From positions 1 to 64,000 of the IMG/VR virus record IMGVR_UViG_3300028608_000006: a stretch of DNA of 64,000 nucleotides, one strand, 5' to 3'. The notes beneath the pieces are model-generated. The model saw nothing but the letters and a program-made list of their open reading frames with translations. It searched no databases and was not told the DNA's origin. Position numbers and translations under genes: made by a program. The stretch's first letter is position 1; every line of letters begins with the position of its first letter. Positions 571 to 13,981 of this stretch are shown here, one piece after another.

Positions 571-804
571 CTAATCAAGGTCCGACCAATCACTGGTTGA
601 ACGTTCTGGCGGTGGCGTTATTCCGGCTGTTTCATTCAGAGTGTCGCCGAAACCTTTAGCGAGTTTGTCCTGAATGTCTCGCAGTGGACCCGGAACGATT
701 TCTTCAAAGGTCTTACCGACCGTCGCTGATACCGAAACCTGTTTACCAGTAGTCCTTTGTCTAACGGTAATGGTCAAGCGTCTACGACTGAGCTTATTGA
801 GCAT
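571..804 (-). CDS. hypothetical protein (77 aa, MLNKLSRRR...)
   Basis: ATG at 804 overlaps the end of the upstream gene (11 nt), consistent with translational coupling; shortened from track ORF 571..864. Confidence 0.45.
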   Translation of the reverse strand: MLNKLSRRRLTITVRQRTTGKQVSVSATVGKTFEEIVPGPLRDIQDKLAKGFGDTLNETAGITPPPERSTSDWSDLD

Positions 805-1453
805 TACCCGCTGCCTCTCGTTGGATGAGTTCCAAAGCTTCTTGCGCCAAACGACGGGATTCATGAAGCATCTCTGGAGGGGTCATCTTGGACGTGTCGA
901 TCTGAGTGGCAGGCTTTTCTTCCACCACTACTACCGGACGAGTGCTCAACACTTCAGGTACCCCCGGGAAGTCCCAGCTCTGAATTGCCCCACCACTGTG
1001 GTTGTCCAACCGGATAGCCTGTTTAACAGCATCCTTCGCAGAACGGCCAATCGACATGACTGCGTTAGCAATCACTTGTCCAGTACCCGCCGACCCAGGA
1101 CCAAAGATCGGGCTGAGGATAACGGTGTTACGCCCCTGCCGTGCATTACGGCTCAAACCAAAGTACCACGCTTCGCCTTTCTCAGTAATGCAGAGAGTAA
1201 CGAAGTCAGTTTCCTGAATGTCTTCCAGCCCGGTGCGGTGGGTAACGCCTTTCTCCAATGCCTCCAAAACCCAAGGCAATACATCCGGGTCGCCCGCCAG
1301 CGCAAAAGCCAAAACTTTAGTACCCTGAATTTCCCAGTACTGATCAGCAGTAGGAAGGTAAAGCTTCTTGTGGTCGCCAATCATCGCAATGTCGCGCTGC
1401 GAGGCTTTCGAATCAGTCGCCAGTACCTTGCCGTCCCAACAGATAGTCGTCAT
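794..1453 (-). CDS. Ntn-hydrolase, HslV/proteasome-beta-like peptidase
   Basis: N-terminus M-TTICWDGKVLATDS gives a Thr1 nucleophile; later SAGTG..A...AVKQAIRLDNHSGG resembles the HslV GSG...D..TGG motifs. Confidence 0.65.
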   Translation of the reverse strand: MTTICWDGKVLATDSKASQRDIAMIGDHKKLYLPTADQYWEIQGTKVLAFALAGDPDVLPWVLEALEKGVTHRTGLEDIQETDFVTLCITEKGEAWYFGLSRNARQGRNTVILSPIFGPGSAGTGQVIANAVMSIGRSAKDAVKQAIRLDNHSGGAIQSWDFPGVPEVLSTRPVVVVEEKPATQIDTSKMTPPEMLHESRRLAQEALELIQREAAGNAQ

Positions 1454-1536
1454 ACCAAATTACCCTTTTATCAACGATTGAACTAAAGCACTGATCTCTG
1501 ACAAACAGTACTATACCAAATCCAGTTACTAATCAG

Positions 1537-1553
1537 GTAATATAGGTTCATAT
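1537..1553 (-). promoter_or_regulatory. early promoter (CCTATATTAC)
   Basis: GTAATATAGG at 1537-1546, about 85 nt upstream of the Ntn-hydrolase start. Confidence 0.65.
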
Positions 1554-1636
1554 CTTTCTTGTAGAGGTCTTTGGTATAGCTCTCTTCCCTTTTCCCTGTA
1601 ACTGGTTCGCCAGCTCACAGAGCGAACAAGGAAGAC

Positions 1637-1654
1637 GCTTAGCTTAAGCTAAGC
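1637..1654. repeat. perfect 18-bp palindrome GCTTAGCTTAAGCTAAGC
   Basis: Self reverse-complementary, read directly; lies in the 1454-1827 intergenic region. Confidence 0.9.
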
Positions 1655-1827
1655 TACTAAGGTCAAGATCACAAGCATCAGACTTAAGCACAATCGCTTA
1701 AATTAGGCACACACTCCCCCTCTGCTTTCGCAAAGAGTTTACTTATTCAGTATACAATACACCCTAGTCTGAAAAATACTCAAATGCTATGAACAGCATC
1801 ACTCCGATCCCTTAGGGAGCTTTATCA

Positions 1828-2673
1828 ATGAATCCAGTAGACTATGCCATTAACCGGGTGATGGGGTCAGACATCGATGACTACCTCCTCAAGCTTGCAT
1901 TCGAAAACCCAAACGCCAACTACAACGGTAACTGGTACAACATCCAAGGCGCTACCACCGTACAGCAAGGCATCCGGGAACAAGTCATCTTCCGCACCGT
2001 ACTCCCCGACTGTCACGTAGGTGGTGGTAAGACCGAGTTCGTCGACCTGTCCGGTGCCAAGATGATGGACAAGGGTAACGGTTGCGTGGAAGTAAACGTA
2101 CCCGACATTGCCACAGGTGGACGGAAGATTGTTTCCGTTAACGAAGTGTACCTCGGTAGCATGACCTCCGCGACTGGTATGTTGGGGATGGGGATGAACG
2201 ACGGCACTGACTGCGGTCAAGGTTCCATCTCTGACATGATGCAGGGAATGATTGACGGGTTGACACCTAGTCGTTCCATGCCACACACCTACACCAATGT
2301 TCACATGACGGGTAACAACAGCTTTGTTATCTTCGGCCTGAACTCCGGTACGTTCTCCATGACCGCCAAGTGCATTCTGGAATACGACCAAGGCATGAGC
2401 AGCATTCACCCGCGCCATTACAAGTTCTTCGCCAATCTGGTTGAACTGGCCGTGAAGGCTTACGTCTACCGTAAGTGCCGCCGTGCAACAGGTGAAGCCG
2501 TTATCCGTGCTGGTATCCCGTTGCAGGATATCAAAGACGACATCCAAGCTTACAGCGATTGCTGGACTCAGTACAAAGAGTACTTCGAGGGCGAGTGGTC
2601 CCGCTGCATGGCTTGGAGCGATACTCAACTGGTTACCGACATGACTCGTATGAGCGTGCCGCGTCGCATGTAA
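1828..2673 (+). CDS. conserved phiKZ-like protein, probable virion structural protein (281 aa)
   Basis: RBS (GGGAG) and strong codon bias; MNPVDYAINRV..I...L..AF start resembles a recalled phiKZ-family structural protein. Confidence 0.55.
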   Translation: MNPVDYAINRVMGSDIDDYLLKLAFENPNANYNGNWYNIQGATTVQQGIREQVIFRTVLPDCHVGGGKTEFVDLSGAKMMDKGNGCVEVNVPDIATGGRKIVSVNEVYLGSMTSATGMLGMGMNDGTDCGQGSISDMMQGMIDGLTPSRSMPHTYTNVHMTGNNSFVIFGLNSGTFSMTAKCILEYDQGMSSIHPRHYKFFANLVELAVKAYVYRKCRRATGEAVIRAGIPLQDIKDDIQAYSDCWTQYKEYFEGEWSRCMAWSDTQLVTDMTRMSVPRRM

Positions 2674-2684
2674 GGAATGCCCGC

Positions 2685-4127
2685 ATGTTAAAAGCACAGT
2701 ACAACCCCGATGACTTTAACTACTCCGAAGAAGAGGAACGCCTCTACCACGAGCAGAATAATGTCTACGGCATGTTCGAAAGTTTGGACGCTCACTCCTA
2801 CCTGGCCCAACAAGGACTTTACCTCGACCCACTGTCTTTGAATGAAGTTCAGTCGGTGTCTGGTACCGAGGCATTGCTCACCGGCGTAAACTTCGAATCC
2901 AACAACGCAATCCTTTCGGTGTGTAACCGTTTCGGTGGTGATCTGGAATGCACTCCGAAGTGGGCGGCGGTTCTGCGTCGTTATGTGTACAGCTTTATCA
3001 CCCGTCGTGTTGGTATGGTGGATTACATGGAGTTCTTCGGTAGCCCGTACCTGGGTTTGCAGAAGATCACCTTTACCACCGCTGACCGTAACCAGTGGTT
3101 CAGTGAAATCTTCGACGTGGACGAAGAGGAACTCAAGGAGAACCTGCACGCCTGTAAAGCGATCAACGCTGAGTGGTCGGTTGTGGGTGACACGTTTAAC
3201 CTGACTGTTCCTTTCCTGCTGCACAAGGTTTACCACAGCAAACTGGACAAAGACACCAAGCATCAGGCGATGGTTGACATCCTCTGCATGTATCACTACA
3301 AGTGTCTGACCTCCATCATCCACAACGACTACCCGTTCCAGGCGCGCCGTGAAGTGGTCGTGGAAACCTACAACCGTCTGAGTCTGAAATACGACATCAA
3401 GCGGTACGGTAGCTGGCGTGCGCTGATCGAGGCTCGGGCTGAGTTCATCCTGAACCCGAACACCGGCATCCACTTCAAGAACGGTGTGATCACCCGGATG
3501 GATGACGACAAGGCGATCGTCTACATGGTGGGCGACATTCAGAACCGCTTGCGTCGGGCTATCAACGACATCAACAAGGTGTTCCACGAGGTCAAAACTC
3601 AGACCAACATTGTAAAGGTGGATTCCTCCAAGATTAACTTGGGCGACGAACTGAGCATCAAGTCCGTTACCAAGGAAGTCACTCAATACGGTCTGTACAT
3701 TGACCGGGTGTTGACGGAAGAAACCTCTTTCTACAAGGAAGAGTTGGCGGGTTACGCTGCGAGTGTTCTGGAGAACGTGCCGAAGGATAAACTGGCTTTC
3801 ATCATCCAGACCTTCCCGCAAGTCTACAAGAACGCCAAGAAGCCTCACTACAAGGAATTTACCGACGCTGTTCTGATTCACTTGTTCGAATACCTTCACA
3901 CCAATGGTATCAAGAAGACGAACGTGTACGACGTGCTTACCAAGATGCGCGGTGCTTATGGCGCCCCTCGCAGTAAGAACGACACCGTTAAAGTCATTCG
4001 CTCGTTGGGCGATGAAATCGTCGTGGAACAGACCGGGGTGAAAACTCCACAAACTGTAACAGTTCTCCGCACGGCATTGAGTCTGTACTTTGTGCTGCGC
4101 ATCCTTTCAAAAGAATATTTCGAGTAA
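2685..4127 (+). CDS. conserved jumbo-phage hypothetical protein (480 aa)
   Basis: Start moved to ATG 2685 (AAGGA RBS just after the previous stop); long biased ORF. Confidence 0.7.
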   Translation: MLKAQYNPDDFNYSEEEERLYHEQNNVYGMFESLDAHSYLAQQGLYLDPLSLNEVQSVSGTEALLTGVNFESNNAILSVCNRFGGDLECTPKWAAVLRRYVYSFITRRVGMVDYMEFFGSPYLGLQKITFTTADRNQWFSEIFDVDEEELKENLHACKAINAEWSVVGDTFNLTVPFLLHKVYHSKLDKDTKHQAMVDILCMYHYKCLTSIIHNDYPFQARREVVVETYNRLSLKYDIKRYGSWRALIEARAEFILNPNTGIHFKNGVITRMDDDKAIVYMVGDIQNRLRRAINDINKVFHEVKTQTNIVKVDSSKINLGDELSIKSVTKEVTQYGLYIDRVLTEETSFYKEELAGYAASVLENVPKDKLAFIIQTFPQVYKNAKKPHYKEFTDAVLIHLFEYLHTNGIKKTNVYDVLTKMRGAYGAPRSKNDTVKVIRSLGDEIVVEQTGVKTPQTVTVLRTALSLYFVLRILSKEYFE

Positions 4128-4136
4128 GAGGCTCCC

Positions 4137-4469
4137 ATGCAAGACTTCCAAGATGACTCCGTTAAAATTCTGGCACAAACCGACACCATCGTCGCTGGCA
4201 AAACCGTCTTGCAACACGGCAGCGGCAAAACCGCCTCGGAAACCGAAGTCTACGTGCTGATCCGTAAGGCTGACGATCATCGCCGCTACTACTCCAGTTC
4301 GGTTGTGTCCAAAGCGGCTTTCCGCGAGATCACCGAGAACAAGGCTACCTTCGAAACCCTGACCACCAACTTCAATGGTCGTCCTCTGGGTGACATGGTT
4401 GCGTTCCTGGCCAAGAACTACGTAGCGCCGAAAGTCCCAGCCGCCGCACCAGTCACTGAAGCTGCTTAA
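4137..4469 (+). CDS. hypothetical protein (110 aa)
   Basis: GAGG RBS, operonic spacing, strong codon bias. Confidence 0.75.
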   Translation: MQDFQDDSVKILAQTDTIVAGKTVLQHGSGKTASETEVYVLIRKADDHRRYYSSSVVSKAAFREITENKATFETLTTNFNGRPLGDMVAFLAKNYVAPKVPAAAPVTEAA

Positions 4470-4471
4470 TC

Positions 4472-5140
4472 ATGGTCGACGTCAGTGAACTCCGCATTGC
4501 TACACCGCTGCCTGTTTCCGAAACGAATCCGGTAGCATTGGAACTCCCGGCTGTTGATGCCCTGAACCAGTGTCCTGAAGTTATCCGTCGTTTGCCGGAC
4601 GGTAGCATCTGGCTCAGTGCGCCAACCAAGGGTGCTTCCAGCAAGTCCACCAAACGCACCCGCTGCGAATGGAAGGAAGATGGTTACTGGTACCTGACCA
4701 GCGCCACCAAGCACTGGAGCCGTCAGACGATGGTGCTGACCAAGGTTAACTCCGCTCTGAAGGTGGTGATTGGTCAGATCCACGTCAAAGACGCCAACAC
4801 GCCTCCACTGAAGGTGTTCTGGAACAAGGGCAAGATCACACTGGGGTTCCGTCAGAACTTTGACAACCCAGAGATCGTTAACTCAGTCCTTCATCCGAAT
4901 GTGCCTCTGGGTACGACGTTCAAGCTCAGCATCGGCGTTACGCACACCGGGTACATCTCGGTTAACGTGTTGGTGCCTGGGTCTGATACCGTCAGCGCGA
5001 AGCTGTGGATGGATACGTCGTGGCGTGATCAGTTGTTGCAGTTCCACGGCGGTCTGTACAACCAGGTCGATTACACCGAGGACACTCTCCCGTACGACGG
5101 TTCTGAATCCATCATCAGCGACCTTGTCATCACCCATTGA
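4472..5140 (+). CDS. polysaccharide lyase family 7 (alginate lyase-like)
   Basis: PL7 motifs RTRCEWKE (R.ELRE-like), GQIH and QFHGGLYNQ (YFKAG.Y.Q-like); no signal peptide. Confidence 0.75.
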   Translation: MVDVSELRIATPLPVSETNPVALELPAVDALNQCPEVIRRLPDGSIWLSAPTKGASSKSTKRTRCEWKEDGYWYLTSATKHWSRQTMVLTKVNSALKVVIGQIHVKDANTPPLKVFWNKGKITLGFRQNFDNPEIVNSVLHPNVPLGTTFKLSIGVTHTGYISVNVLVPGSDTVSAKLWMDTSWRDQLLQFHGGLYNQVDYTEDTLPYDGSESIISDLVITH

Positions 5141-5153
5141 GTAAGGAAGTTGA

Positions 5154-5696
5154 ATGTCTTACGTCTTAGTTAACAGCGCAAGTCTGCGTGATGCTCAAAA
5201 TGCCGCGTGCGACATCAAGGCAAAGCTCCACATGAACTTCGATCGTGACATTCTGATCGTGGAAGACTTCATGTCGGAGACAGAGCGTGGTCAAGCACTG
5301 TTCGAGGAAATCAAAAGGCCTAACATCCGTGGTGCACGGGCTTTGTCGATTATCTTGGATCAGCGCAAGGCTTTGATCAAGGAAGTTATCATCCCAGCTG
5401 TTAACTCTGGCCAGCAGGTGGTCTACGTTGGCGGTGTGCTGGATGACACCCGTTACGTCAGGACTATCGAGTTTCACGACATCCTGAAAGAAAACCAAGA
5501 GATGTTGCAGTCTTTCGGTGGCTTCACTTATCCGCGGGGTGCTATCTACGTGAAGCATCCTGCCGATTCGCCCAACACCAGTCGCGGCTACTTCAAGCGT
5601 TGCGACCGGTTGATGGCAAGCATGGCTGGCTTGAAGTTGGTCAACTACGACTATCGTCATGGCACCATGATCAAGATCAACGACATGTTCCGCTGA
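5154..5696 (+). CDS. hypothetical protein, possibly a degenerate dTMP-kinase fold
   Basis: RKALIKEVIIPAVNSGQQVV resembles the TMK R.....I.PAL..G..V motif, but no P-loop or DR motif is present. Confidence 0.45.
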   Translation: MSYVLVNSASLRDAQNAACDIKAKLHMNFDRDILIVEDFMSETERGQALFEEIKRPNIRGARALSIILDQRKALIKEVIIPAVNSGQQVVYVGGVLDDTRYVRTIEFHDILKENQEMLQSFGGFTYPRGAIYVKHPADSPNTSRGYFKRCDRLMASMAGLKLVNYDYRHGTMIKINDMFR

Positions 5697-5705
5697 GGAA
5701 TCAGT

Positions 5706-5981
5706 ATGAGCTTGACCACTCTTAAAACTATCAAGCGTAACAACAGCCTTGCTCTGCTAGAAGTACCGATGAACCCAACCTCCGCGTGGTTGCTTGTCCC
5801 TCTTGACAGTCAAGCTCCCCACCCCGACGTGATTGACTTCAGCAATGAAGGTTATCGCTTCTACCTCGACCCGAACATTGCGGGCGATGCTTTTGATCAA
5901 ATTAACCACGGTGTCGAACCGTTGGGTAAATTCAAAGGACTTCGTTGGTCTGACACTGTTCCGTTCCTGGTTTCGCATTGA
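5706..5981 (+). CDS. hypothetical protein (91 aa)
   Basis: GAGGA RBS; last gene of the plus-strand operon before a hairpin. Confidence 0.65.
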   Translation: MSLTTLKTIKRNNSLALLEVPMNPTSAWLLVPLDSQAPHPDVIDFSNEGYRFYLDPNIAGDAFDQINHGVEPLGKFKGLRWSDTVPFLVSH

Positions 5982-5992
5982 TTCAAACATAT

Positions 5993-6029
5993 CCCTTACC
6001 CTGCCTCCATTACGGGGACAGGGTAAGGG
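5993..6029. terminator. bidirectional GC-rich hairpin between convergent genes
   Basis: CCCTTACCCTG...CAGGGTAAGGG, 11-bp inverted repeat. Confidence 0.75.
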
Positions 6030-6040
6030 GGTTATGTCCG

Positions 6041-9000
6041 CTAGGCTGCGCGCTTCAATTGCAGCATTCGCTTACTACGTTCAAACTTGGCCTGCTCCAG
6101 CAGACTATCGACTGTCATGAGGCGAGACTGTTCAGGCGGCAGTACTTTGCCGAGCTTCCGAATCTCTGCTTCCAGACGCATAGCCAAGATGTTGTCGTTG
6201 GTATTGAGCAACTCTTCAGTTAGCCCCTCCACCCGCGCTTTCACCTTGTCCAAGAATTGAACCACATGAGGCTCCATTGCAGGACCCTTCTTGTTCGAAC
6301 CCGTATCCAGCAGGTTCTTGGTATCCGTTAATGCAATCCCACCTTGGATACCATACAGGGACTTGTTAGCCCCCAACTTGATGAACCAGTACGTCAACAG
6401 CCAGCCGATTACCAAGTCATCGTGCTTCTTGGCATCGTGGTCGATTCGATCACCCTTAGTCCGCAGGTTGATCAACTCGTCCGCCAGCTTGTCGTAGTTC
6501 AGACCGTACGCTGTCATCCCCACCGCTTCCTGAATCAACCCGTAAAGAATCTCACGAGAACGGGAAGTGGTGTTGAACCCGAAGTACTGCTTAAACTTCA
6601 GGTAGAAGTTCTTCTGACGATAAGCGAACTTAACGTTTTGGATCTCCTTGAACTCTTTCTCGTACGTTACCGTGTCTTGGTAGACTTGGTTGAAGATGCG
6701 GGTGAATGGATCCATCCCTTTCGCCGGCAGCATAATCAACAGGTTGTCGATCATGTGGTGGGCGTAGTTGCGTTCAATCACCAGCAGGCTGTTGTTGAGG
6801 ACTTGCAGCAGGTCCACTATAATGGCTGTCACGTCGTCCAAGAAGGCCAATGGATAACGACCCACCCCAACTACCTTACCAGTACGCATGCTCCTGATAA
6901 TGATGGTACAGGCGTCCTTGTTGATAGCCGAGGACGTATCCACACCAATCAGGAAGTAGTCGTTGTACTCTTTCTTACCCATGTTGATGAGTTCTTGCTG
7001 GGTGCAGAAGAAGTCCATGAACAACCCGCTTTCCTTGTACTCCTTACTCCAGACCACCGCGCTCTTACAGTTGTTGATTGCTTCCCGCGTTACGTCATCA
7101 AACAGACGGTTCTCACCATCTTCCACCCACATCAACAACAAGTCGATCTTGGCCTTAGCAAGGCTGAGGTTGAGGGAGTCGATTGTCTCCTTCACCCAAT
7201 CCTTGTCTTTGCCCAACTGCATGTAGTTGTAAACCATGGCAATCGATGGACTGGTGGTAGACTTCGGCGAAGCACGCAGCAGACGTTCACGCAGATGACT
7301 CTCACTGAAGGAGTCAAAGAACTTCTCACGCCATTCAGTCGAGGACATCAGCTTCTCGAACATGAACTCGCCACTTGGGTGCAACGTTGTGTTCGGAGTC
7401 GTAATGAAACTGATTCCGTACGGTTTACCCTGTGTCCTGGCGTTGGCCATCGCGGTCAGTGCAGAAGGTGCACATCCGTTGATGATCTCTTCGATGAAAC
7501 TAATGTAAGCCGGTTCGTCGTAGGTTGTCGTTTCAACGGTAAGACCCCGTCCCAAGTCACCTGCTGCATCACGACCCATCTGAGGAACGTTAATGTTGAG
7601 CGTGTTGACATACTCATCACCAAAGGCCTTGTAGTTGAGGTAGTTACCTGAGTCCTTGTCTCGCCAGGTGGGGTTCACCAAGTAAGACGGCATACAGGTG
7701 CGGATCTTCTTGATGGCGTCAATGAACTGAGCCCGGTTATCCGACTTCAACGTAATGAGGTGAGACTTGTACCCTCGACCGTTGATGTAGGTCAGCCAGA
7801 AGTTGATGACCTGAACAGACACCGTGTTGTGCGTGACAATGAAGTCATCGGTGATGTACAGGTGTTCCTGGTTGTCCACTTCGATACAACTGGCCTCGTC
7901 GTCGCCACAGTACTCGATCTTGTCGACCCAGAGCCGGTTGTCCACTTCCGGACGCTTCTCTTTACGGAAACGGAAGTACTCCATCTCCTTAGGCAGCGTG
8001 ACCGTCAGGGTTTCCTTCTCTGGCTTGGCAGTGCCACCCAATCCCCTCACCAGGTAAGCCAACTGAGACGCTATAAGCGCGTTAGGCGCCTTTAAGGTCA
8101 AAGTCTTACCGATCTTCAGTCCTTCATCGAAAAACGCGTGTAGCAGCTTCAGGCGATCTTCCTGAGCCCCTTCAAGGTAGGACGATGGAAGCCCGACGTT
8201 TAAATCGAAGTCAAAAGGTTTTCCATCCCGACGTTTAATGATTCGGAACTTCTTGTCCTTGTCCATGGCCAGCGTCTGAGGAACCACAGACTCCAAGTAA
8301 GCGACTTGCTCCTTACTCAGGTTACGACCCCGCAACACACCATCGGTTAACTCAGAGTTGATCATGCAACCGATGAGGTAAGGGTCCAAGGTAAGACGTT
8401 GCGGTTTACCCTTCTCCGAACGAATCAACGGAAGCTCGAACGCATGCCCCTTCGCCATGGCGGTAAGCAGATCCGCTGTGGTGTAGTCGTCCGTAATACC
8501 CCGACGGCTCGCAGTACCCCGGGAAAAGTCCTTCAGGGTCCACAAGTGCTCAGCACCCACATCGGTGGAACGACCGTCGCTCATGGTCACCCGGTAAAGA
8601 CGCAACTTGCCCTGAGGGTGGATGCCAATCACGTTGGTGGTCTTACCAAAGCGGTCGATCAGCACATCACCAGTACGCAGGTCACCGATCTTCTTCCACG
8701 TATCAGCAGGGGTGATGTTACCCTGCTTCTCAACCTTGACTCGAACCTTGCTCGAGTTACGCTGCATCTTGCCTTGTTGGCGAGGCATGATCATGTACGT
8801 GGTGATGTGGTTGAGGTAGTTCCAGATGAAACTGATGTTACCCCGGTTCGCCATGAAGTTCTGATCAGGCTTTAACCGACAGACCTCACGCAGGAAGTAC
8901 CAGAAGTTAGTCCGGCACTCTTCGGCGATCATCAACTTCTGTTCGTTGGTGAGATCGTCAGCGTAAGGATCCACACCCTGCAACATGCGGTTGTTCAGCT

Positions 9001-9310
9001 GCAACAGGAAGTAGTAGTTCTTAATACCTTGTTGACGGAAGACTTCGGCGGTACGAATAAAGCTCGCATTACCGGTCTTCAAATCAGGTGCAGCTTTGTA
9101 ACGGTAGAAGTCTTTCAGGAAGCGCACGGTCTTGATGCTGTGCAGGCTGTCTTCCTCGAAGTGAGCCATCAAGGTCTCTTCTTCGGTGCGTGCATCGGAG
9201 TCCACACGGTTCTGCCGGTCGTCAATCAACTTCTTGGGTAGGTTCTGCGCACCCAAGTATGTTACCAGCTTCTTTGCAAACTCCAATGTCTTTTCATAAG
9301 CTTCAGACAT
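6041..9310 (-). CDS. terL: terminase large subunit (phiKZ gp25-like) with intein
   Basis: Walker A MPRQQGK|TVS after intein removal, Walker B-like TTYDEPAY, nuclease motifs IGVDTSS and HDDLVIG; next to the sheath/tube block. Confidence 0.9.
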   Translation of the reverse strand: MSEAYEKTLEFAKKLVTYLGAQNLPKKLIDDRQNRVDSDARTEEETLMAHFEEDSLHSIKTVRFLKDFYRYKAAPDLKTGNASFIRTAEVFRQQGIKNYYFLLQLNNRMLQGVDPYADDLTNEQKLMIAEECRTNFWYFLREVCRLKPDQNFMANRGNISFIWNYLNHITTYMIMPRQQGKMQRNSSKVRVKVEKQGNITPADTWKKIGDLRTGDVLIDRFGKTTNVIGIHPQGKLRLYRVTMSDGRSTDVGAEHLWTLKDFSRGTASRRGITDDYTTADLLTAMAKGHAFELPLIRSEKGKPQRLTLDPYLIGCMINSELTDGVLRGRNLSKEQVAYLESVVPQTLAMDKDKKFRIIKRRDGKPFDFDLNVGLPSSYLEGAQEDRLKLLHAFFDEGLKIGKTLTLKAPNALIASQLAYLVRGLGGTAKPEKETLTVTLPKEMEYFRFRKEKRPEVDNRLWVDKIEYCGDDEASCIEVDNQEHLYITDDFIVTHNTVSVQVINFWLTYINGRGYKSHLITLKSDNRAQFIDAIKKIRTCMPSYLVNPTWRDKDSGNYLNYKAFGDEYVNTLNINVPQMGRDAAGDLGRGLTVETTTYDEPAYISFIEEIINGCAPSALTAMANARTQGKPYGISFITTPNTTLHPSGEFMFEKLMSSTEWREKFFDSFSESHLRERLLRASPKSTTSPSIAMVYNYMQLGKDKDWVKETIDSLNLSLAKAKIDLLLMWVEDGENRLFDDVTREAINNCKSAVVWSKEYKESGLFMDFFCTQQELINMGKKEYNDYFLIGVDTSSAINKDACTIIIRSMRTGKVVGVGRYPLAFLDDVTAIIVDLLQVLNNSLLVIERNYAHHMIDNLLIMLPAKGMDPFTRIFNQVYQDTVTYEKEFKEIQNVKFAYRQKNFYLKFKQYFGFNTTSRSREILYGLIQEAVGMTAYGLNYDKLADELINLRTKGDRIDHDAKKHDDLVIGWLLTYWFIKLGANKSLYGIQGGIALTDTKNLLDTGSNKKGPAMEPHVVQFLDKVKARVEGLTEELLNTNDNILAMRLEAEIRKLGKVLPPEQSRLMTVDSLLEQAKFERSKRMLQLKRAA
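7826..8767 (-). mobile_element. intein (314 aa, class-3 WCT type, degenerate LAGLIDADG remnant) in terminase
   Basis: Begins MQRNSSKV after GK; block B GRSTDVGAEHLW, block F ASCIEVD, ends FIVTHN; +1 residue is Thr. Confidence 0.88.
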
Positions 9311-9352
9311 AGGGACCTCGTTAAAAATAGAGATGGCGTACAGAAAAGAAAG

Positions 9353-9380
9353 CAGGCCAGAGGTGTTACCCCCTGGCCTG
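9353..9380. terminator. hairpin, probable terminator upstream of terL
   Basis: CAGGCCAG.GG-tgtta-CC.CTGGCCTG; same TGTTA loop as the 27327 hairpin. Confidence 0.55.
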
Positions 9381-9396
9381 TTTAGAACGGTATTAC

Positions 9397-9585
9397 TTAC
9401 ACGGCAGCCGGAGCTTCTTTCAGACGCTCATGCGACGAGACGGCGCGTGCGTCATAGATCATGACCTCACGGGATTCGCCGTCTTGCAGAATGATCTCTT
9501 CGACCACAACGCCACCGTTGGTGACAACTACAACTACTTCTTTGTCGCGCGCACAGTGTGCCGAGACTTTAACGCTAGAAGTCAT
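9397..9585 (-). CDS. hypothetical protein (62 aa)
   Basis: AGGAG RBS, phage-like codon usage. Confidence 0.6.
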   Translation of the reverse strand: MTSSVKVSAHCARDKEVVVVVTNGGVVVEEIILQDGESREVMIYDARAVSSHERLKEAPAAV

Positions 9586-9612
9586 GGGGCTTCTCCTGAT
9601 TGATGTATAACA

Positions 9613-11334
9613 TCAAACGAAGAGTTCAACCACCAAACCAGTCAGACCCAGCTGCAACTCGGCGCCCGAAGCCGCTTTGTTGATCCAGCTGATGAACCAG
9701 GTCTTGCCTTTCTGGAGCTGGATGTTGATCGGGTTCTCTTTGTTGTAGTCGCCCACCGCAAAGCGCCACTTCCGACCGGTATCGTCCATGAGGTCGAAGT
9801 GAGTCGGGGTAGGAGCCTTGTCCTCGTTGCGAGGGGAGTAAGCAGGTTTGATCGACCAGTACAGCTCATCCAGCCAATCCACCAAGTCACGCTGCCCTTG
9901 CGACACATCGAAGGTGGTGTTGACACCGTTGTTCTTGACAACAATGCTCTTGCCACCGAACGCCGGCATGTCGTTCGAGAAGTTGACGTCCCAACGCTTG
10001 CCTGGACCGTTGACGTTTTTGTACAACGTGATCCCGGTGTGTTGAATGAAGACCACACTCTCGTAGATGTTCGACACATCGCGGAGGTTGAGGTTGAAGA
10101 TCATCGACTGAGACACGCCGTACGAAGTCGGACGGAATGGCGGGCTCTGATCGTTCAACGTTACCAGATCGGTAACATCGGTCCGGGTCTTGCGGTCCAG
10201 ATCGAACAGCCAGTGCTTCAGGACATAACCAGCGGTTGCCGTGTCCCACTGCGGGTAGCTGTAGATCTTCGGCGAGTAAGCACCGATTGCGTCACCCGAT
10301 TGCAGCATGTAACTGTGGGTGGCGTGTTTCGGGCTACCTGGCTTGGCGATGTAATGTTGCTCATCGTCGGCCAAGGTGTAGATCAGCGAGATCTCAGTGG
10401 ACTGACCAGGCCAGGTTGGACGGTGTTCCTGCAACCCATACAGGTTGAACTTGGTACCGTTCACCGGCCAGATCTGAGTCGAGCCATCCGAGTAGTACAC
10501 TGCCGCACGCAGTTCCACCGCCAACAGCTGGATGTTCATTGGAACAATGAGACGATCCGGGTCGCTGGTGTTGGTGAACCATGGCGAGATCAGTTTGACC
10601 TCAGTGACGTACTTGATGCCGATCTGGTGATCACGCATGTAAGCGCAATGCTGAACCATCACAGGCTGCACAGGTGGAATGAACTCACCACCCTCGTCGT
10701 AGAACACCAGCGTACAGCGGGTGCCGTCCGGCAGACCTTCTTCGTTCTCGGTGACACTGAACGAACCCGTGGTCATGATCGACTCGTTGGTCCGGTCCAC
10801 AATCTCGGCCAACTTGGTCGGAACCTTGTTGGTCAGCAGATTGAGGGAGGTGTCGTACTGAGCACTGATGATCTTGCCGTTAGCGCTGGCATCGTTACCG
10901 ACGAAGAGCTTGGCGTAACCCGCACCCGGACGCATGATCGTGCTATCAACACGAGCCACGTTCGGGCGAACGCTGTAGTCGATGCTGAGCAATGCTTCAC
11001 CCAACAGTGGACCACCACGCAGACCGAAGATCCAGTCTTGTTCCGTGGTGTTACCTTCGTCGACGTTGGTCAAACGCCAAGGCACCAGCGTGGTCTTCAG
11101 GGTTGCCTGCCAGTCCACATGGGAAGCCCGGTAGATGACGCCCTGATCAATATCGAACACCGCCTCGTTTTCTTGAGGGACCACGTACTTGTGAAGATCG
11201 TCAATCGGATGTTTGTCCGGATCGAAGATGTTCTCAATGTAGTGGAAGGTACGACGCTCCCCGGTGTTTTGTGGGGTAATGGCCGTGCCAGGTACCGCCC
11301 CTGCTGCCGTCGTATTCGGCTTGCTATCGAACAT
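9613..11334 (-). CDS. virion structural protein (phiKZ gp26-like by position, 573 aa)
   Basis: Size and position between terminase and sheath match recalled phiKZ-family synteny; beta-rich sequence. Confidence 0.65.
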   Translation of the reverse strand: MFDSKPNTTAAGAVPGTAITPQNTGERRTFHYIENIFDPDKHPIDDLHKYVVPQENEAVFDIDQGVIYRASHVDWQATLKTTLVPWRLTNVDEGNTTEQDWIFGLRGGPLLGEALLSIDYSVRPNVARVDSTIMRPGAGYAKLFVGNDASANGKIISAQYDTSLNLLTNKVPTKLAEIVDRTNESIMTTGSFSVTENEEGLPDGTRCTLVFYDEGGEFIPPVQPVMVQHCAYMRDHQIGIKYVTEVKLISPWFTNTSDPDRLIVPMNIQLLAVELRAAVYYSDGSTQIWPVNGTKFNLYGLQEHRPTWPGQSTEISLIYTLADDEQHYIAKPGSPKHATHSYMLQSGDAIGAYSPKIYSYPQWDTATAGYVLKHWLFDLDRKTRTDVTDLVTLNDQSPPFRPTSYGVSQSMIFNLNLRDVSNIYESVVFIQHTGITLYKNVNGPGKRWDVNFSNDMPAFGGKSIVVKNNGVNTTFDVSQGQRDLVDWLDELYWSIKPAYSPRNEDKAPTPTHFDLMDDTGRKWRFAVGDYNKENPINIQLQKGKTWFISWINKAASGAELQLGLTGLVVELFV

Positions 11335-13981
11335 TGTTGTTTACCTCGAAATGGCCTTCCAGCACACAGACTGAGTTGAGGTAGCTTTCGTTTACCTGAT
11401 TCAGGAACAAGAGCTCATTAGCGGTTACCGTCAGCTTACCGAAGTTAGCGTACGGCATGATCGCGAAGTAACGGAGATCGAAGTCCAAGTTGATTGGATC
11501 ATGATCATACCACCACAGGTAAGGACGCACCGTCTCACGAATCGATTGCTCGGTGTAAGCGGTATCGCCAGCAGCCTTAGGCGGCAGAACGATCAACCCA
11601 TTGAGTAGACCGTTGACGATGGCGTTCATGGTTGGACTGTACAGCCGGTACTTGTCTTGGATGTTCGGAATGACCGGTACACCAGGACCCGTTGGTTGAA
11701 CAGGATCGATCTCGCCAGCATTGGTTGTAGGCTTGGGCAACCACATGGTCATGTAGTCGCTAACGCGTTGGTCAGTTTCCCGGCTACGGTCGTACAGGGG
11801 ATAGTTGTAATACGGCTCGACAAACTTAATCGGGCAGTAAACGTGTTTCACCATGTACGGCTTACCGTTGAGGTGGTCCCAGAGATCATCTGGTACTTCT
11901 CTTTCGGCGCGAGGAACCTCGTCGGTGGGATATAGGGCTCCATTGATAACCGTACGAGTAACTCGATCACCCCGCAGGTTGTAACGACCAAAACGCCCAA
12001 TGACACCACCTTCAACAAATCCCAGTTCGGTTTCGAACTTAGGCGTATCCATGTCGCCATGCATCCCATGGGCTCTCACCGTGATCTTCTGCGGACCGTC
12101 GACGATGAACTCCTTGTTGATGATGTAGCAGTACTTATCCTTGTACAACCAATCCACGTGGTCGACCAGTGGATGGCCGTTTAACCAGAGGTCCACTTGG
12201 GCGAAACTCATCGGGAAGATCAAACCACCTTCCTCGTAGATTTCCGTCAAGGCAAAGGACAGGCTGTGGTCGATGTGATCCAACTCGAACTCGTAAGCCA
12301 GGCAGGCCTTGTTGGTCAACACGATTGCACGGTAGTTTACCTTGTCCAGACCTACCCAGTGGATAGTCCCGTCGTTGAACGTGTAGAGAGTAGCGTCGCC
12401 GGTTCTATCGACCATCTCGCCTACCAATTCACCGAGGTCAACACTCCACGGTTGTACGTACACCCGGAAGTCGTACTCAGGAGCAACTGTGATGTCGTCC
12501 TTCGTGACAGTGTAGTCCATCTTGCGCTGAGCTTTACCCAACACAAACTCGACCAACACACACTGTGGGTTGAACGGGCTGTAGTAAACCTCGTCCGTTC
12601 GGTTGTGCACTTCCAACAACTGACCCGCCGCGTCGTATTCCCACGCCGAGAACATCGCTCGGTAAGTAGGAGGAACGATAACACCACGACCCCCTTCAAC
12701 GAACTCCACCCGCACTGGGGTTTCACTCACCACACGAGTCGCCGCGTTGTAACCCAGCGCCAGCGATGCGTTCTCGCGCTTCACTGCCGGGTATTGGCTG
12801 CGAGTCAGGCTCATCACCGTCCCGCTTTCCAAGCCATCGGCCGTCCACTCAGGAACCGTAGCCCGGTCACCTGTCATTGCCCGCACAATCCCCACATCAT
12901 CAAAACGATACAGGTACTTAATGCGTTGGTGTTCGTTCGGCCACTGGTATTCCCAGTCGGTCTTACGCACCAGCACCATGATCTTGTTCTTCGACACGTC
13001 GGACAAGTTGGCGTGGTAGTTGCTCGCATTACGAATGGCTTCATCCGCAATCGCCACATCCACATGGGTCAACTGACGAAGAGTCGTTTCGTTGTTCCGA
13101 TGGATGTACAAGCCGTACTTCTTCGGACCGGTAACGTAGAAGTCGTTATCGTCGAAGTAACGCAAGGTGTAATCACCTTTCCGCTTAGGCGGGTGCAGGA
13201 TCATCTTGCGTTTGTTGTCCAGCGAAGACCAGAAGTCTTTCAAAGCACTGTAGTTGTAGCGTTCAACCCGAATAACTGTTGGGTCGTGCCAGAACTCCAC
13301 CACGTCCCCCGCTTGAAGCCCCTGTAGTGCGTTAGGAGCCCCATCGAAGAACACACCGTTGTGCATCACACCAGTGAACCCAGGCTTGCCCTTAAACAGG
13401 CTGTAGCGAGCTGTGAAGACCGCGAGTTCCGCAGTGCTTTCATAGGTCATGGTTTCGTAGGTGTACGGGTTGTGGTCATCCGAGATTGCCAGATCACCAA
13501 AGTCAACCGGAATGCTTGGGGTGAAACAACGGAAGAAGAACTCGTCCACTTTAGGAACCGGGAAGTTCTTCATTTTCTGCAAAGCGATCAACACCAGCCC
13601 ATCGTAGGTAATCATCACCCAGCAATGCGAACGGCTGTATTGGAAACCCTTGGTGTTGTACAGATCGAGCTGCATGCCGCGAACCTTGCACAACGCCCCG
13701 AGGTTAACCCAACGGTCGAGTGGGTTGCGGTACAGCACGTTGTTGCGGAAGTTCCAGAACCCAGGATGCAAACCCCCGGCACTGAAGATGTGGAAGAAGG
13801 TATTGACCTTAGGCAACGCCCGCCACTTCCCCATGTAGTTGTAGTTCATGGAGGCACCGTAGTCGTCGGTTACCCGAACCAGCTTGACTTGGTACTGGTG
13901 GTTCTCTTCCGGGTTACCCCACAAGTTTGCTTCCACGTACTGAACAACCGGGTTATTACTGTCGTAAACGGTCGTCGTCAT
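11324..13981 (-). CDS. virion structural protein (phiKZ gp27-like by position, 885 aa)
   Basis: Start moved to ATG 13981 (MTTTVYDSN, AAGGA RBS); synteny. Confidence 0.65.
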   Translation of the reverse strand: MTTTVYDSNNPVVQYVEANLWGNPEENHQYQVKLVRVTDDYGASMNYNYMGKWRALPKVNTFFHIFSAGGLHPGFWNFRNNVLYRNPLDRWVNLGALCKVRGMQLDLYNTKGFQYSRSHCWVMITYDGLVLIALQKMKNFPVPKVDEFFFRCFTPSIPVDFGDLAISDDHNPYTYETMTYESTAELAVFTARYSLFKGKPGFTGVMHNGVFFDGAPNALQGLQAGDVVEFWHDPTVIRVERYNYSALKDFWSSLDNKRKMILHPPKRKGDYTLRYFDDNDFYVTGPKKYGLYIHRNNETTLRQLTHVDVAIADEAIRNASNYHANLSDVSKNKIMVLVRKTDWEYQWPNEHQRIKYLYRFDDVGIVRAMTGDRATVPEWTADGLESGTVMSLTRSQYPAVKRENASLALGYNAATRVVSETPVRVEFVEGGRGVIVPPTYRAMFSAWEYDAAGQLLEVHNRTDEVYYSPFNPQCVLVEFVLGKAQRKMDYTVTKDDITVAPEYDFRVYVQPWSVDLGELVGEMVDRTGDATLYTFNDGTIHWVGLDKVNYRAIVLTNKACLAYEFELDHIDHSLSFALTEIYEEGGLIFPMSFAQVDLWLNGHPLVDHVDWLYKDKYCYIINKEFIVDGPQKITVRAHGMHGDMDTPKFETELGFVEGGVIGRFGRYNLRGDRVTRTVINGALYPTDEVPRAEREVPDDLWDHLNGKPYMVKHVYCPIKFVEPYYNYPLYDRSRETDQRVSDYMTMWLPKPTTNAGEIDPVQPTGPGVPVIPNIQDKYRLYSPTMNAIVNGLLNGLIVLPPKAAGDTAYTEQSIRETVRPYLWWYDHDPINLDFDLRYFAIMPYANFGKLTVTANELLFLNQVNESYLNSVCVLEGHFEVNNNVR

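What the first reader, a model, noticed from the sequence alone, without database searches (positions are those of the whole stretch)
4472..5140. Phage-encoded PL7 alginate lyase-like gene embedded in a structural operon
All three PL7 signature segments are recognisable (R.CEW.E, QIH, F.GGLYNQ). It lacks a signal peptide and is co-transcribed with a probable virion protein. Alginate is the biofilm exopolysaccharide of Pseudomonas and Azotobacter. Inference: a host-derived lyase released at lysis, or virion-associated, that clears mucoid matrix. The replacements in the third motif (H for K, G for A) may alter specificity.
Basis: partly seen in the sequence, partly recalled or inferred. Interest (0 to 1): 0.6.

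Follow-up and report, generated by a model that had tools for sequence, protein, structure and literature searches.

The report
Jumbo-phage PL7 alginate-lyase-type gene
A soil jumbo phage carries an intact family-7 polysaccharide (alginate-type) lyase gene without an export signal; it belongs to a lineage shared by Pseudomonas jumbo phages and prophages, so it is a real but uncharacterised member of a known enzyme family.

Summary
Window 4472-5140 (+) is a 222-aa ORF that matches Pfam Alginate_lyase2 (PL7) end to end (E 1.3e-37). It folds with high confidence (pLDDT 93) into the PL7 beta-jelly roll; the best structural match is P. aeruginosa PA1167 (TM 0.85). The four canonical active-site residues (R64, Q102, H104, Y196) are present and there is no room for a signal peptide.

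The genome is a complete 231.8-kb uncultured phiKZ/EL/RisingSun-like jumbo phage from soil. The lyase lies in a variable accessory slot downstream of a phiKZ gp32-like head-protein gene and convergent with the terminase gene. Cultured relatives (phiRU, RisingSun, Joad) lack it.

The FHGG(V/I/L)YNQ variant is not phage-specific. It is fixed in 119 of 120 relatives.

"Host-derived" is not supported. The lineage occurs only in Pseudomonas genomes, mostly in prophages downstream of a CI-like repressor, and in Pseudomonas-type phages. The jumbo-phage copies form one well-supported clade under purifying selection, with base composition matching their genomes.

Most likely function (inferred, untested): a soluble endolytic uronate lyase made in the cytoplasm that reaches alginate only at lysis. 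It is a new member of a known kind, of modest interest.

The parts
4472..5140 (+). PL7 (Alginate_lyase2) gene, 222 aa, single catalytic domain, no signal peptide
4661..4678 (+). Motif 1, R64-C-E-W-K-E69 (canonical RxExR/K). R64 aligns with the carboxylate-binding Arg of PA1167 and A1-II'
   Evidence: invariant R64 and E66 in A1
4775..4783 (+). Motif 2, Q102-I-H104 (Q(I/V)H). H104 is the candidate catalytic base
   Evidence: the role of His follows PMC9345997
5042..5065 (+). Motif 3, F191-H-G-G-L-Y196-N-Q198 (variant of YFKAGxYxQ). Y196 is the candidate catalytic acid
   Evidence: FHGG[VIL]YNQ in 119 of 120 relatives
1828..2673 (+). DUF7484 protein (Joad gp3-like), conserved jumbo-phage gene at the head of the same-strand gene string
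2685..4127 (+). phiKZ gp32-like 'structural head protein', 480 aa from ATG 2685. The ORF listing gives an upstream TTG at 2559 that overlaps the previous gene
4137..4469 (+). 110-aa ORF of unknown function. Its stop lies 2 nt before the PL7 start, so translational coupling is possible. Found only in the closest metagenomic relatives
5154..5696 (+). 180-aa ORF of unknown function. It is present in 13 related jumbo contigs, but its order relative to PL7 varies
5706..5981 (+). 91-aa ORF of unknown function, last gene of the string
5987..6036 (.). Strong hairpin (11-bp perfect arms at 5993-6003 and 6019-6029) between the convergent 91-aa ORF and the terminase gene. Probable two-way terminator that closes the unit
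   Evidence: dG -30.7 and -34.7 kcal/mol, z -5.0 and -6.8
6041..9310 (-). Terminase large subunit (1089 aa, with an intein-like insert), convergent with the PL7 string

Best explanation
The gene encodes a soluble, single-domain polysaccharide lyase of family PL7 that cleaves a polyuronate by beta-elimination. R64 and Q102 would hold and neutralise the C5 carboxylate at subsite +1. H104 would abstract the C5 proton and Y196 would protonate the leaving glycosidic oxygen.

It is an accessory ('moron'-type) gene of a soil jumbo phage whose host is most probably a Pseudomonas. It is made in the infected cell's cytoplasm, probably on the same late transcript as the gp32-like head-protein gene. With no export signal and no virion-anchoring domain, it reaches its substrate only when the cell lyses.

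Outside the cell it would cut the alginate (polyM/polyMG) matrix around the burst cell and its neighbours. That would lower viscosity, free progeny virions and expose receptors.

Shown here: family, fold, conserved active-site residues, absence of a signal peptide, purifying selection, and gene context. Inferred: the substrate, the timing, and release at lysis.
For: - Family and fold. Full-length PF08787 hit, E 1.3e-37. AlphaFold model pLDDT 93, pTM 0.91, all-beta. The top 43 Foldseek PDB hits are all PL7 lyases, the best being PA1167 (1VAV) at TM 0.85, E 9e-16.
- Active site. Sequence and profile alignments to PA1167 and A1-II' put R64, Q102, H104 and Y196 on their RSELRE, QIH and FKAGxY residues. 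All four are invariant in 25 diverse relatives. The His/Tyr catalytic pair and Arg/Gln carboxylate binding are described for PL7 in PMC9345997.
- No export signal. The ORF is maximal and the fold starts at residue about 7.
- Selection. dN/dS is 0.11-0.22 against other jumbo-phage copies. GC3 is 0.70 against 0.65-0.69 in neighbouring genes.
- Retention. The gene is kept in at least four unrelated genome neighbourhoods of jumbo phages.
- Pseudomonas link. The best 80 of 142 relatives in species-representative genomes are all Pseudomonas. The only cultured phages with it infect P. syringae, P. putida and P. koreensis.
- Habitat. The phage is seen in soil and rhizosphere metagenomes of several studies.
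- Link to lysis in a distant relative. In phage AH02 a 30%-identical lyase is followed by an 'esterase', a small ORF and then the holin gene.
- Gene packing. Gaps are 2-13 nt, there is no internal terminator, and a strong hairpin follows the string.
- Contrast with virion enzymes. The virion-borne wall hydrolase of this phage is a domain inside a 2679-aa tail protein, not a free enzyme.
Against: - No activity, expression or proteome data exist for this protein or any member of its lineage. No RNA run holds the stretch.
- The host is not identified. The nearest cultured phage genomes infect P. aeruginosa (Elvirus) and Erwinia (RisingSun), and both lack the gene.
- PL7 also contains a glucuronan lyase (7NDE), so the fold does not fix the substrate.
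- Pseudomonas alginate is O-acetylated (own knowledge), which hinders many lyases. No GDSL-type esterase was found in the phage.
- In temperate phages the homologue lies downstream of the CI-like repressor rather than by the lysis genes. That fits a lysis-release role poorly.
- The conserved Lys of motif 3 is His here, with unknown consequence.
Confidence: 0.5

Rival explanations
1. It is an active PL7 lyase, but its natural substrate is another uronic-acid polymer of the host, such as a glucuronan-type exopolysaccharide or a uronate-containing capsule or O-antigen. The lineage-wide His/Gly variant of motif 3 would reflect that specificity.
For: FHGG[VIL]YNQ replaces YFKAGxYxQ in 119 of 120 members. 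A PL7 glucuronan lyase (7NDE) is among the structural and profile matches. The lineage is only about 24% identical to any characterised PL7. Reviews note that PL7 motifs do not predict specificity reliably (PMC8618178).
Against: All characterised bacterial PL7 matches are alginate lyases, and the closest structure is the Pseudomonas alginate lyase PA1167. Alginate is the only well-known polyuronate exopolysaccharide of the P. fluorescens, putida and syringae groups that carry the lineage (own knowledge).
Confidence: 0.15
2. Its role is inside the living cell or in lysogeny, not after lysis. It could be a conversion or host-modulation factor, for example trimming alginate intermediates or oligomers to alter mucoidy, phage adsorption or superinfection. 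The jumbo phages would use it during infection.
For: In all 89 loci that also hold a CI-like S24 repressor (41 bacterial, 48 small viral contigs), the lyase lies downstream of it on the same strand, ahead of Erf/YqaJ/SSB genes. This is the slot that rexAB-type conversion genes occupy in lambda (the lambda comparison is own knowledge). The protein is cytoplasmic by sequence. Signal-less cytoplasmic PL7 lyases exist (A1-II', own knowledge).
Against: Alginate polymer is made at and beyond the inner membrane, so a cytoplasmic lyase has no obvious polymer substrate (own knowledge). There is no PADLOC defence match. In the window it follows late-type structural genes.
Confidence: 0.15
3. It is a virion-associated depolymerase, carried on the particle or packaged in the head, that digests the matrix during adsorption.
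For: It follows a head-protein gene on the same strand. In vB_PpuM phages the homologue lies next to tail-protein genes.
Against: It is a bare 222-aa catalytic domain. There is no N-terminal anchor, no trimeric beta-helix and no propeptide; the N-terminus is part of the jelly roll. Its genomic position is not tied to structural genes in Psa21-like and other jumbo phages, where it sits in tRNA/RtcB or DHFR neighbourhoods. Virion enzymes of this phage type are fused into large structural proteins.
Confidence: 0.1
4. It is a catalytically dead or binding-only PL7 fold (lectin-like), or a decaying passenger gene.
For: The conserved Lys of motif 3 is replaced. No activity has been shown for the lineage.
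Against: The Arg, Gln, His and Tyr residues are invariant. dN/dS is 0.1-0.2. The frame is intact in more than 170 loci.
Confidence: 0.04

Closest known systems
PA1167 of Pseudomonas aeruginosa (PDB 1VAV), PL7 alginate lyase
   Same: About the same size (222 aa), a single beta-jelly-roll domain and no signal peptide. Best structural match (TM 0.85). The R, Q, H and Y residues align, as does the C-terminal 'vsH'.
   Different: Only about 24% identical (E 1e-8 by sequence). PA1167 keeps the canonical FKAG motif, whereas this lineage has FHGG. PA1167 is a chromosomal gene, whereas this lineage is mostly phage- or prophage-borne.
A1-II' of Sphingomonas sp. A1 (PDB 2CWS, 2ZAA), PL7
   Same: Same fold and catalytic tetrad: the mutant names in the matched PDB entries are H191N and Y284F, and the alignment columns coincide.
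   Different: 19-20% identity. It is part of an alginate-assimilation pathway, not a phage gene.
Psa21 gp405 (QBJ02929.1), 'polysaccharide lyase family 7 protein' of a 305-kb P. syringae pv. actinidiae jumbo phage
   Same: Same lineage (56% identity, full length) and the same jumbo-phage clade. It is already annotated as PL7 in GenBank.
   Different: It lies among tRNA genes, HNH endonucleases and RtcB, not by the terminase. Its GC is 42% against 55% here. It is not mentioned or studied in the genome announcement.
Prophage and chromosomal 224-aa PL7 proteins of the P. fluorescens, putida and mandelii groups
   Same: 54-59% identical, same length, same FHGG motif, no signal peptide.
   Different: They sit downstream of a CI-like repressor in lambdoid prophages (41 of 83 loci) or in ordinary chromosomal settings (32 of 83). 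They form separate clades from the jumbo-phage copies.
Classical phage alginate depolymerases: tail-spike or halo-forming enzymes of Pseudomonas and Azotobacter phages (own knowledge, not tested here)
   Same: The proposed purpose is the same: a phage enzyme that thins the alginate matrix.
   Different: Those are virion-borne and usually part of large tail proteins. This is a free 222-aa PL7 domain with no anchor.

Membership tests
Polysaccharide lyase family 7 (Pfam PF08787 Alginate_lyase2) | Profile match over the family's curated threshold along the whole domain | tested here: met
   130 bits against a 29.7-bit cut-off, residues 2-222 on model positions 1-225. Same result in the six-frame genome search.
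Polysaccharide lyase family 7 | Beta-jelly-roll (beta-sandwich) fold with a substrate cleft | tested here: met
   Model pLDDT 93 with 15 strands. The top 43 PDB hits are all PL7, TM 0.68-0.85. Cleft geometry was not inspected because no coordinates were available to me.
Polysaccharide lyase family 7 | Catalytic His and Tyr, plus the Arg and Gln that bind the +1 carboxylate | tested here: met
   R64, Q102, H104 and Y196 align with the corresponding residues of PA1167 and A1-II' and are invariant in 25 relatives.
Polysaccharide lyase family 7 | Three conserved segments: RxE(L/V)R, Q(I/V)H and YFKAGxYxQ | tested here: inconclusive
   Segments 1 (RCEWK) and 2 (QIH) are met. Segment 3 reads FHGGLYNQ, which keeps G, Y and Q but replaces K with H and A with G, throughout the lineage.
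Polysaccharide lyase family 7 | Beta-eliminative cleavage of alginate (or another polyuronate) | not testable with these tools
   No biochemical data exist for any member of this lineage.
CAZy PL7 subfamily assignment | Placement by dbCAN/CAZy subfamily models | not testable with these tools
   No dbCAN library was available. There is no NCBIfam match.
Secreted or periplasmic alginate lyase | N-terminal Sec or Tat signal peptide, or a lipobox | tested here: not met
   The ORF is maximal. The first 20 residues have net charge -2 and no hydrophobic core. Residues 7-26 are strands of the fold. No dedicated predictor was available.
Virion-associated phage depolymerase (tail spike or fibre) | Anchor or adaptor domain plus a large, usually trimeric, beta-helix catalytic body, encoded in the tail module | tested here: not met
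   The single 222-aa PL7 domain fills the whole protein. Its position varies among jumbo phages.
phiKZ-like (chimallivirus-type) jumbo phage, for the genome that carries the gene | Shared core genes and synteny with phiKZ, EL and RisingSun | tested here: met
   The record is 231.8 kb and rated complete. The terminase is 73% identical in nucleotides to Elvirus phiRU. A gp32-like protein is found in 290 jumbo-phage records. DUF7484 and DUF7193 are present. The nucleus shell and tubulin genes were not searched.

The most novel reading that the evidence does not exclude
The FHGG-type, signal-less PL7 lineage may be a phage-pool enzyme of Pseudomonas, not a host enzyme. It is carried by jumbo lytic phages, by about 200-kb vB_PpuM phages, and by lambdoid prophages in the repressor-proximal 'conversion' slot. 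Its real job may not be matrix clearing at lysis. It could instead be a so far undescribed intracellular or lysogeny-linked function, or act on a non-alginate uronate substrate. That would make it a new functional class within PL7.
Probability: 0.15. Interest if true: 0.55.

Novelty: new member of a known kind. Interest (0 to 1): 0.3.

Why it matters
Alginate-rich biofilms limit phage spread and phage therapy or biocontrol of Pseudomonas. A small, soluble, phage-evolved lyase lineage is easy to express and test as a biofilm-thinning enzyme. It is kept by many unrelated Pseudomonas phages, which argues that it is useful to them. It is also a marker suggesting a Pseudomonas host for uncultured jumbo phages. 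Its recurrent placement beside prophage repressors is a testable hint that polysaccharide lyases may take part in lysogenic conversion. None of this overturns current understanding. It extends a known theme, phage depolymerases, to free non-virion PL7 enzymes.

Tried and rejected
- NCBIfam and PADLOC scans of the lyase and its three small neighbours gave no match. Pfam and PHROGs gave nothing for the 110-, 180- and 91-aa ORFs.
- The sigma-70 promoter scan found none in 1400-6400, and the terminator-pattern hits were at or below the shuffle expectation. These phages use their own RNA polymerases, so this says little.
- Literature searches (jumbo phage + alginate lyase; Psa21 + polysaccharide lyase; prophage + PL7; vB_PpuM) found no study of this lineage.
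- The sequencing-run search found DNA holders only (soil and rhizosphere) and no RNA run. Read laying was therefore not used and expression could not be examined.
- A search for a partner alginate deacetylase (GDSL/SGNH, PF13472) in the phage genome found none.
- The window's 110-aa ORF does not match the 139-aa ORF that fills the equivalent gap of phiRU.
- Rooting the lineage with the distant vB_PpuM and AH02 sequences left the order of the three main clades unresolved (supports 0-63). No donor or direction of transfer is claimed.
- The role of the motif-3 Lys could not be pinned down from the papers read.
- Not used, as unnecessary: the large representative-protein search, the complex prediction and any alternative genetic code.

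Full report
**1. The observation**

Window 4472..5140 (+) is a 222-aa ORF and the longest possible frame at that place. It matches Pfam PF08787 (Alginate_lyase2, the PL7 catalytic domain) from residue 2 to 222 over the whole 225-position model, E 1.3e-37, 130 bits against a 29.7-bit cut-off. It also matches PHROG 31475 ('unknown function') at E 4e-91.

- R64-C-E-W-K-E69
- Q102-I-H104
- F191-H-G-G-L-Y-N-Q198

The written pattern 'R.CEW.E' is off by one residue, because the sequence reads R62-T-R64-C-E-W-K-E69.

**2. Fold and active site**

An AlphaFold2 model built on 25 relatives is confident (pLDDT 93, pTM 0.91) and all-beta. Foldseek against the PDB returns only PL7 lyases in the first 43 places. 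The best is P. aeruginosa PA1167 (1VAV) at TM 0.85, E 9e-16, followed by AlyMc, A1-II', the Klebsiella lyase 4OZX, FlAlyA and a fungal PL7 glucuronan lyase, 7NDE.

Sequence and profile alignments to PA1167 and A1-II' place R64, Q102, H104 and Y196 on the residues of their RSELRE, QIH and FKAGxY segments. The catalytic His/Tyr pair and the Arg/Gln carboxylate contacts are as described for PL7 in PMC9345997. All four residues are invariant in 25 diverse relatives.

There is no room for a signal peptide. The ORF cannot be extended, the first 20 residues carry net charge -2 with no hydrophobic core, and residues 7-26 are strands of the jelly roll.

**3. The genome**

The window is the first 64 kb of a 231,788-bp IMG/VR virus record rated 100% complete. 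Several features mark it as a phiKZ-like jumbo phage near Elvirus and Risingsunvirus:
- Its terminase gene is 73.5% identical in nucleotides to Pseudomonas phage phiRU (Elvirus) and about 72% to Erwinia phages RisingSun and Joad.
- The protein at 2685-4127 has homologues in 290 jumbo-phage records and is the counterpart of phiKZ gp32, annotated 'structural head protein'.
- DUF7484 and DUF7193 proteins are present, as is a 2679-aa tail protein with an embedded GH19 wall-hydrolase domain.

Near-identical DNA occurs in soil and rhizosphere metagenomes from several studies. No RNA run holds it.

**4. Local context**

The + strand carries, in order:
- DUF7484 (1828-2673)
- gp32-like head protein (2685-4127)
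- a 110-aa ORF (4137-4469)
- the lyase (4472-5140)
- a 180-aa ORF (5154-5696)
- a 91-aa ORF (5706-5981)

The gaps between them are 2-13 nt. A strong hairpin follows at 5987-6036 (dG -30.7 and -34.7 kcal/mol on the two strands, z -5 and -6.8), and then the convergent terminase gene.

Co-transcription with the head-protein gene is therefore plausible but not shown. The lyase has a weak ribosome-binding site, and its start lies 2 nt after the upstream stop, which suggests translational coupling.

The lyase and the three small ORFs are not part of the conserved module:
- phiRU has only one unrelated ORF between the gp32-like gene and the terminase gene.
- None of the four genes has a homologue in the phiRU, RisingSun or Joad loci.
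- Only 12 of 50,697 cultured phage records hold a relative of the lyase: Psa21 (twice), nine vB_PpuM phages and AH02.

Among metagenomic relatives of this phage, the lyase always lies in this gap, but its order relative to the 180-aa gene changes.

**5. The lineage**

The word search found 401 relatives.
- Hits at 60-86% identity lie on contigs of 210-320 kb.
- Hits at about 57% are 224-aa 'polysaccharide lyase family 7' proteins of Pseudomonas.

A scan of species-representative genomes gave 142 relatives, and the best 80 are all Pseudomonas of the fluorescens, mandelii, koreensis and putida groups. A scan of IMG/VR gave 108 relatives. These split into jumbo-size contigs at 61-86% identity and 20-60-kb contigs at 55-58%.

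The third motif is FHGG[V/I/L]YNQ in 119 of 120 relatives. The His-for-Lys and Gly-for-Ala changes therefore define the lineage rather than a phage adaptation.

I clustered the flanking ORFs of 173 loci.
- 41 of 83 bacterial loci and 48 small viral contigs carry a CI-like S24 repressor (PF00717, phrog_4). It is always upstream of the lyase on the same strand, with Erf, YqaJ exonuclease and SSB genes beyond.
- 51 of 83 bacterial loci share at least one flanking gene family with the small viral contigs.
- 32 share none, for example a P. putida copy next to an RND efflux operon.

**6. Phylogeny and selection**

A maximum-likelihood tree of 167 sequences gives three clades:
- One clade of 26 holds all 25 jumbo-phage copies plus one 73-kb contig (SH-aLRT 98).
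- One clade of 63 (SH-aLRT 99) contains prophage-context copies only.
- One clade of 76 mixes prophage and chromosomal copies.

The order of the three clades is unresolved, because the outgroups sit on long branches. I left seven loci out of the tree as apparent duplicates of others, without checking that their sequences are identical.

Within the jumbo clade the gene sits in at least four unrelated neighbourhoods:
- by the terminase in EL/RisingSun-like phages
- among tRNA, HNH and RtcB genes in Psa21-like phages
- near DHFR in a 250-270-kb group
- in other settings

dN/dS against other jumbo copies is 0.11-0.22. The gene's GC and GC3 match its neighbours here (0.55 and 0.70). In Psa21 the gene's own values are much lower (0.42 and 0.33); its neighbours there were not measured.

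The jumbo-phage gene is thus an old, selected resident that has moved among jumbo phages. It is not a recent capture from the host. 'Host-derived' cannot be confirmed, and the nearest 'host' copies are themselves largely phage genes.

**7. Mechanism**

The best reading is a soluble endolytic PL7 lyase made in the cytoplasm and, lacking any export or virion-anchoring element, released when the cell lyses. Outside the cell it would cut alginate, which is the only well-known polyuronate of the Pseudomonas groups that carry the lineage (own knowledge).

Points in support from relatives:
- In phage AH02 a 30%-identical lyase is followed by an 'esterase', a small ORF and then the holin gene.
- In vB_PpuM phages the homologue lies close to a tail protein and a 798-aa protein with a GDSL esterase domain.

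Points against:
- No activity or expression data exist.
- PL7 also includes glucuronan lyases.
- No esterase for O-acetylated alginate is present in this phage.
- The repressor-proximal position in prophages fits a lysogeny-linked role better than a lysis-linked one.

I put the lysis-release alginate-lyase model at about 0.5. The rivals are:

| Rival | Confidence |
|---|---|
| Another uronate substrate | 0.15 |
| An intracellular or lysogeny-linked role | 0.15 |
| Virion association | 0.10 |
| An inactive fold | 0.04 |

**8. Comparison with known systems and verdict**

It meets the PL7 membership tests for profile, fold and catalytic residues. Motif 3 is deviant, and activity and CAZy subfamily could not be tested. 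It does not meet the criteria for a secreted lyase or a tail-spike depolymerase.

A member of the same clade (Psa21 gp405) is already labelled PL7 in GenBank, and JGI labels some relatives 'alginate lyase'. No paper in the searchable library discusses them.

It is a new member of a known kind. The modestly new points are that the lineage is spread across several phage types of Pseudomonas, that the jumbo-phage copies form a single clade, and that the prophage copies have a fixed place next to the repressor.

**9. Operators' notes**

Read laying was not used. No contig looked human. No alternative genetic code was applied. The costly representative-protein search was not needed, because the family scan and the word search settled the identity.

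Noticed in passing
window 6041-9310 (-): The terminase large subunit is 1089 aa, against about 717 aa for phiKZ gp25. From about residue 200 it carries an insert that matches mini-inteins (gp41-1 intein E 2e-5, DnaB inteins), and a '...VTHNT' junction follows further downstream. This looks like an intein. Terminases of similar length (1051-1102 aa) occur in phiRU, RisingSun and the metagenomic relatives.
   Followed up: partly
L017-L096 (Pseudomonas genomes) and L118-L176 (20-60-kb viral contigs): In all 89 loci that hold both genes, the PL7 homologue lies downstream of a CI-like S24 repressor on the same strand (median gap 0.6-1.8 kb), followed by Erf, YqaJ and SSB genes. This is a fixed 'conversion-gene' slot in lambdoid Pseudomonas prophages.
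   Followed up: partly
L177 (Pseudomonas phage AH02) 4001-7037: A 285-aa PL7 lyase, 30% identical, is followed by a 433-aa annotated 'esterase' (no Pfam match), a small ORF and then the holin gene. This may be a lyase plus deacetylase pair tied to lysis.
   Followed up: no
L002 (vB_PpuM-Amme-1) 5995-12146: The 226-aa PL7 homologue (38% identical) faces a 'minor tail protein' gene and a 798-aa protein with a GDSL/SGNH esterase domain. This may be a matrix-degrading pair in about 200-kb P. putida phages.
   Followed up: no
window 5987-6036: A very stable hairpin lies between the convergent 91-aa ORF and the terminase gene, with 11-bp perfect arms (dG -31 and -35 kcal/mol, z -5 and -6.8). It is probably a two-way terminator, although it lacks a clear U-tract on the + strand.
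   Followed up: partly
window 2559-4127 (+): The mechanical ORF starts at TTG 2559 and overlaps the DUF7484 gene by 115 nt. Homologue matches begin near residue 83-100, and the nearest relative's gene call is 480 aa. The true start is probably ATG 2685.
   Followed up: partly
window 39262-47301 (+): A 2679-aa tail protein (phrog_3201) carries an embedded GH19/endolysin-like domain at residues about 2090-2300. It is the virion-borne wall hydrolase of this phage type.
   Followed up: no
window 794-1453 (-): A 219-aa protein matches the HslV-family peptidase PHROG (phrog_1040, E 1e-22). It is divergent from the DUF7484 gene across a 374-bp intergenic region.
   Followed up: no
L007-L010 (P. putida and a Logan contig): The same trio (60-aa ORF on the minus strand, the PL7 gene, and a 78-aa ORF) appears next to an RND efflux operon in P. 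putida chromosomes and, in another contig, beside DUF2786/DUF7168 genes. The trio may move as a small cassette.
   Followed up: no
window 4137-5981: Near-identical DNA is held by soil and rhizosphere metagenome runs from several independent studies, with smaller shares in wetland and digester samples. No RNA run holds it.
   Followed up: partly
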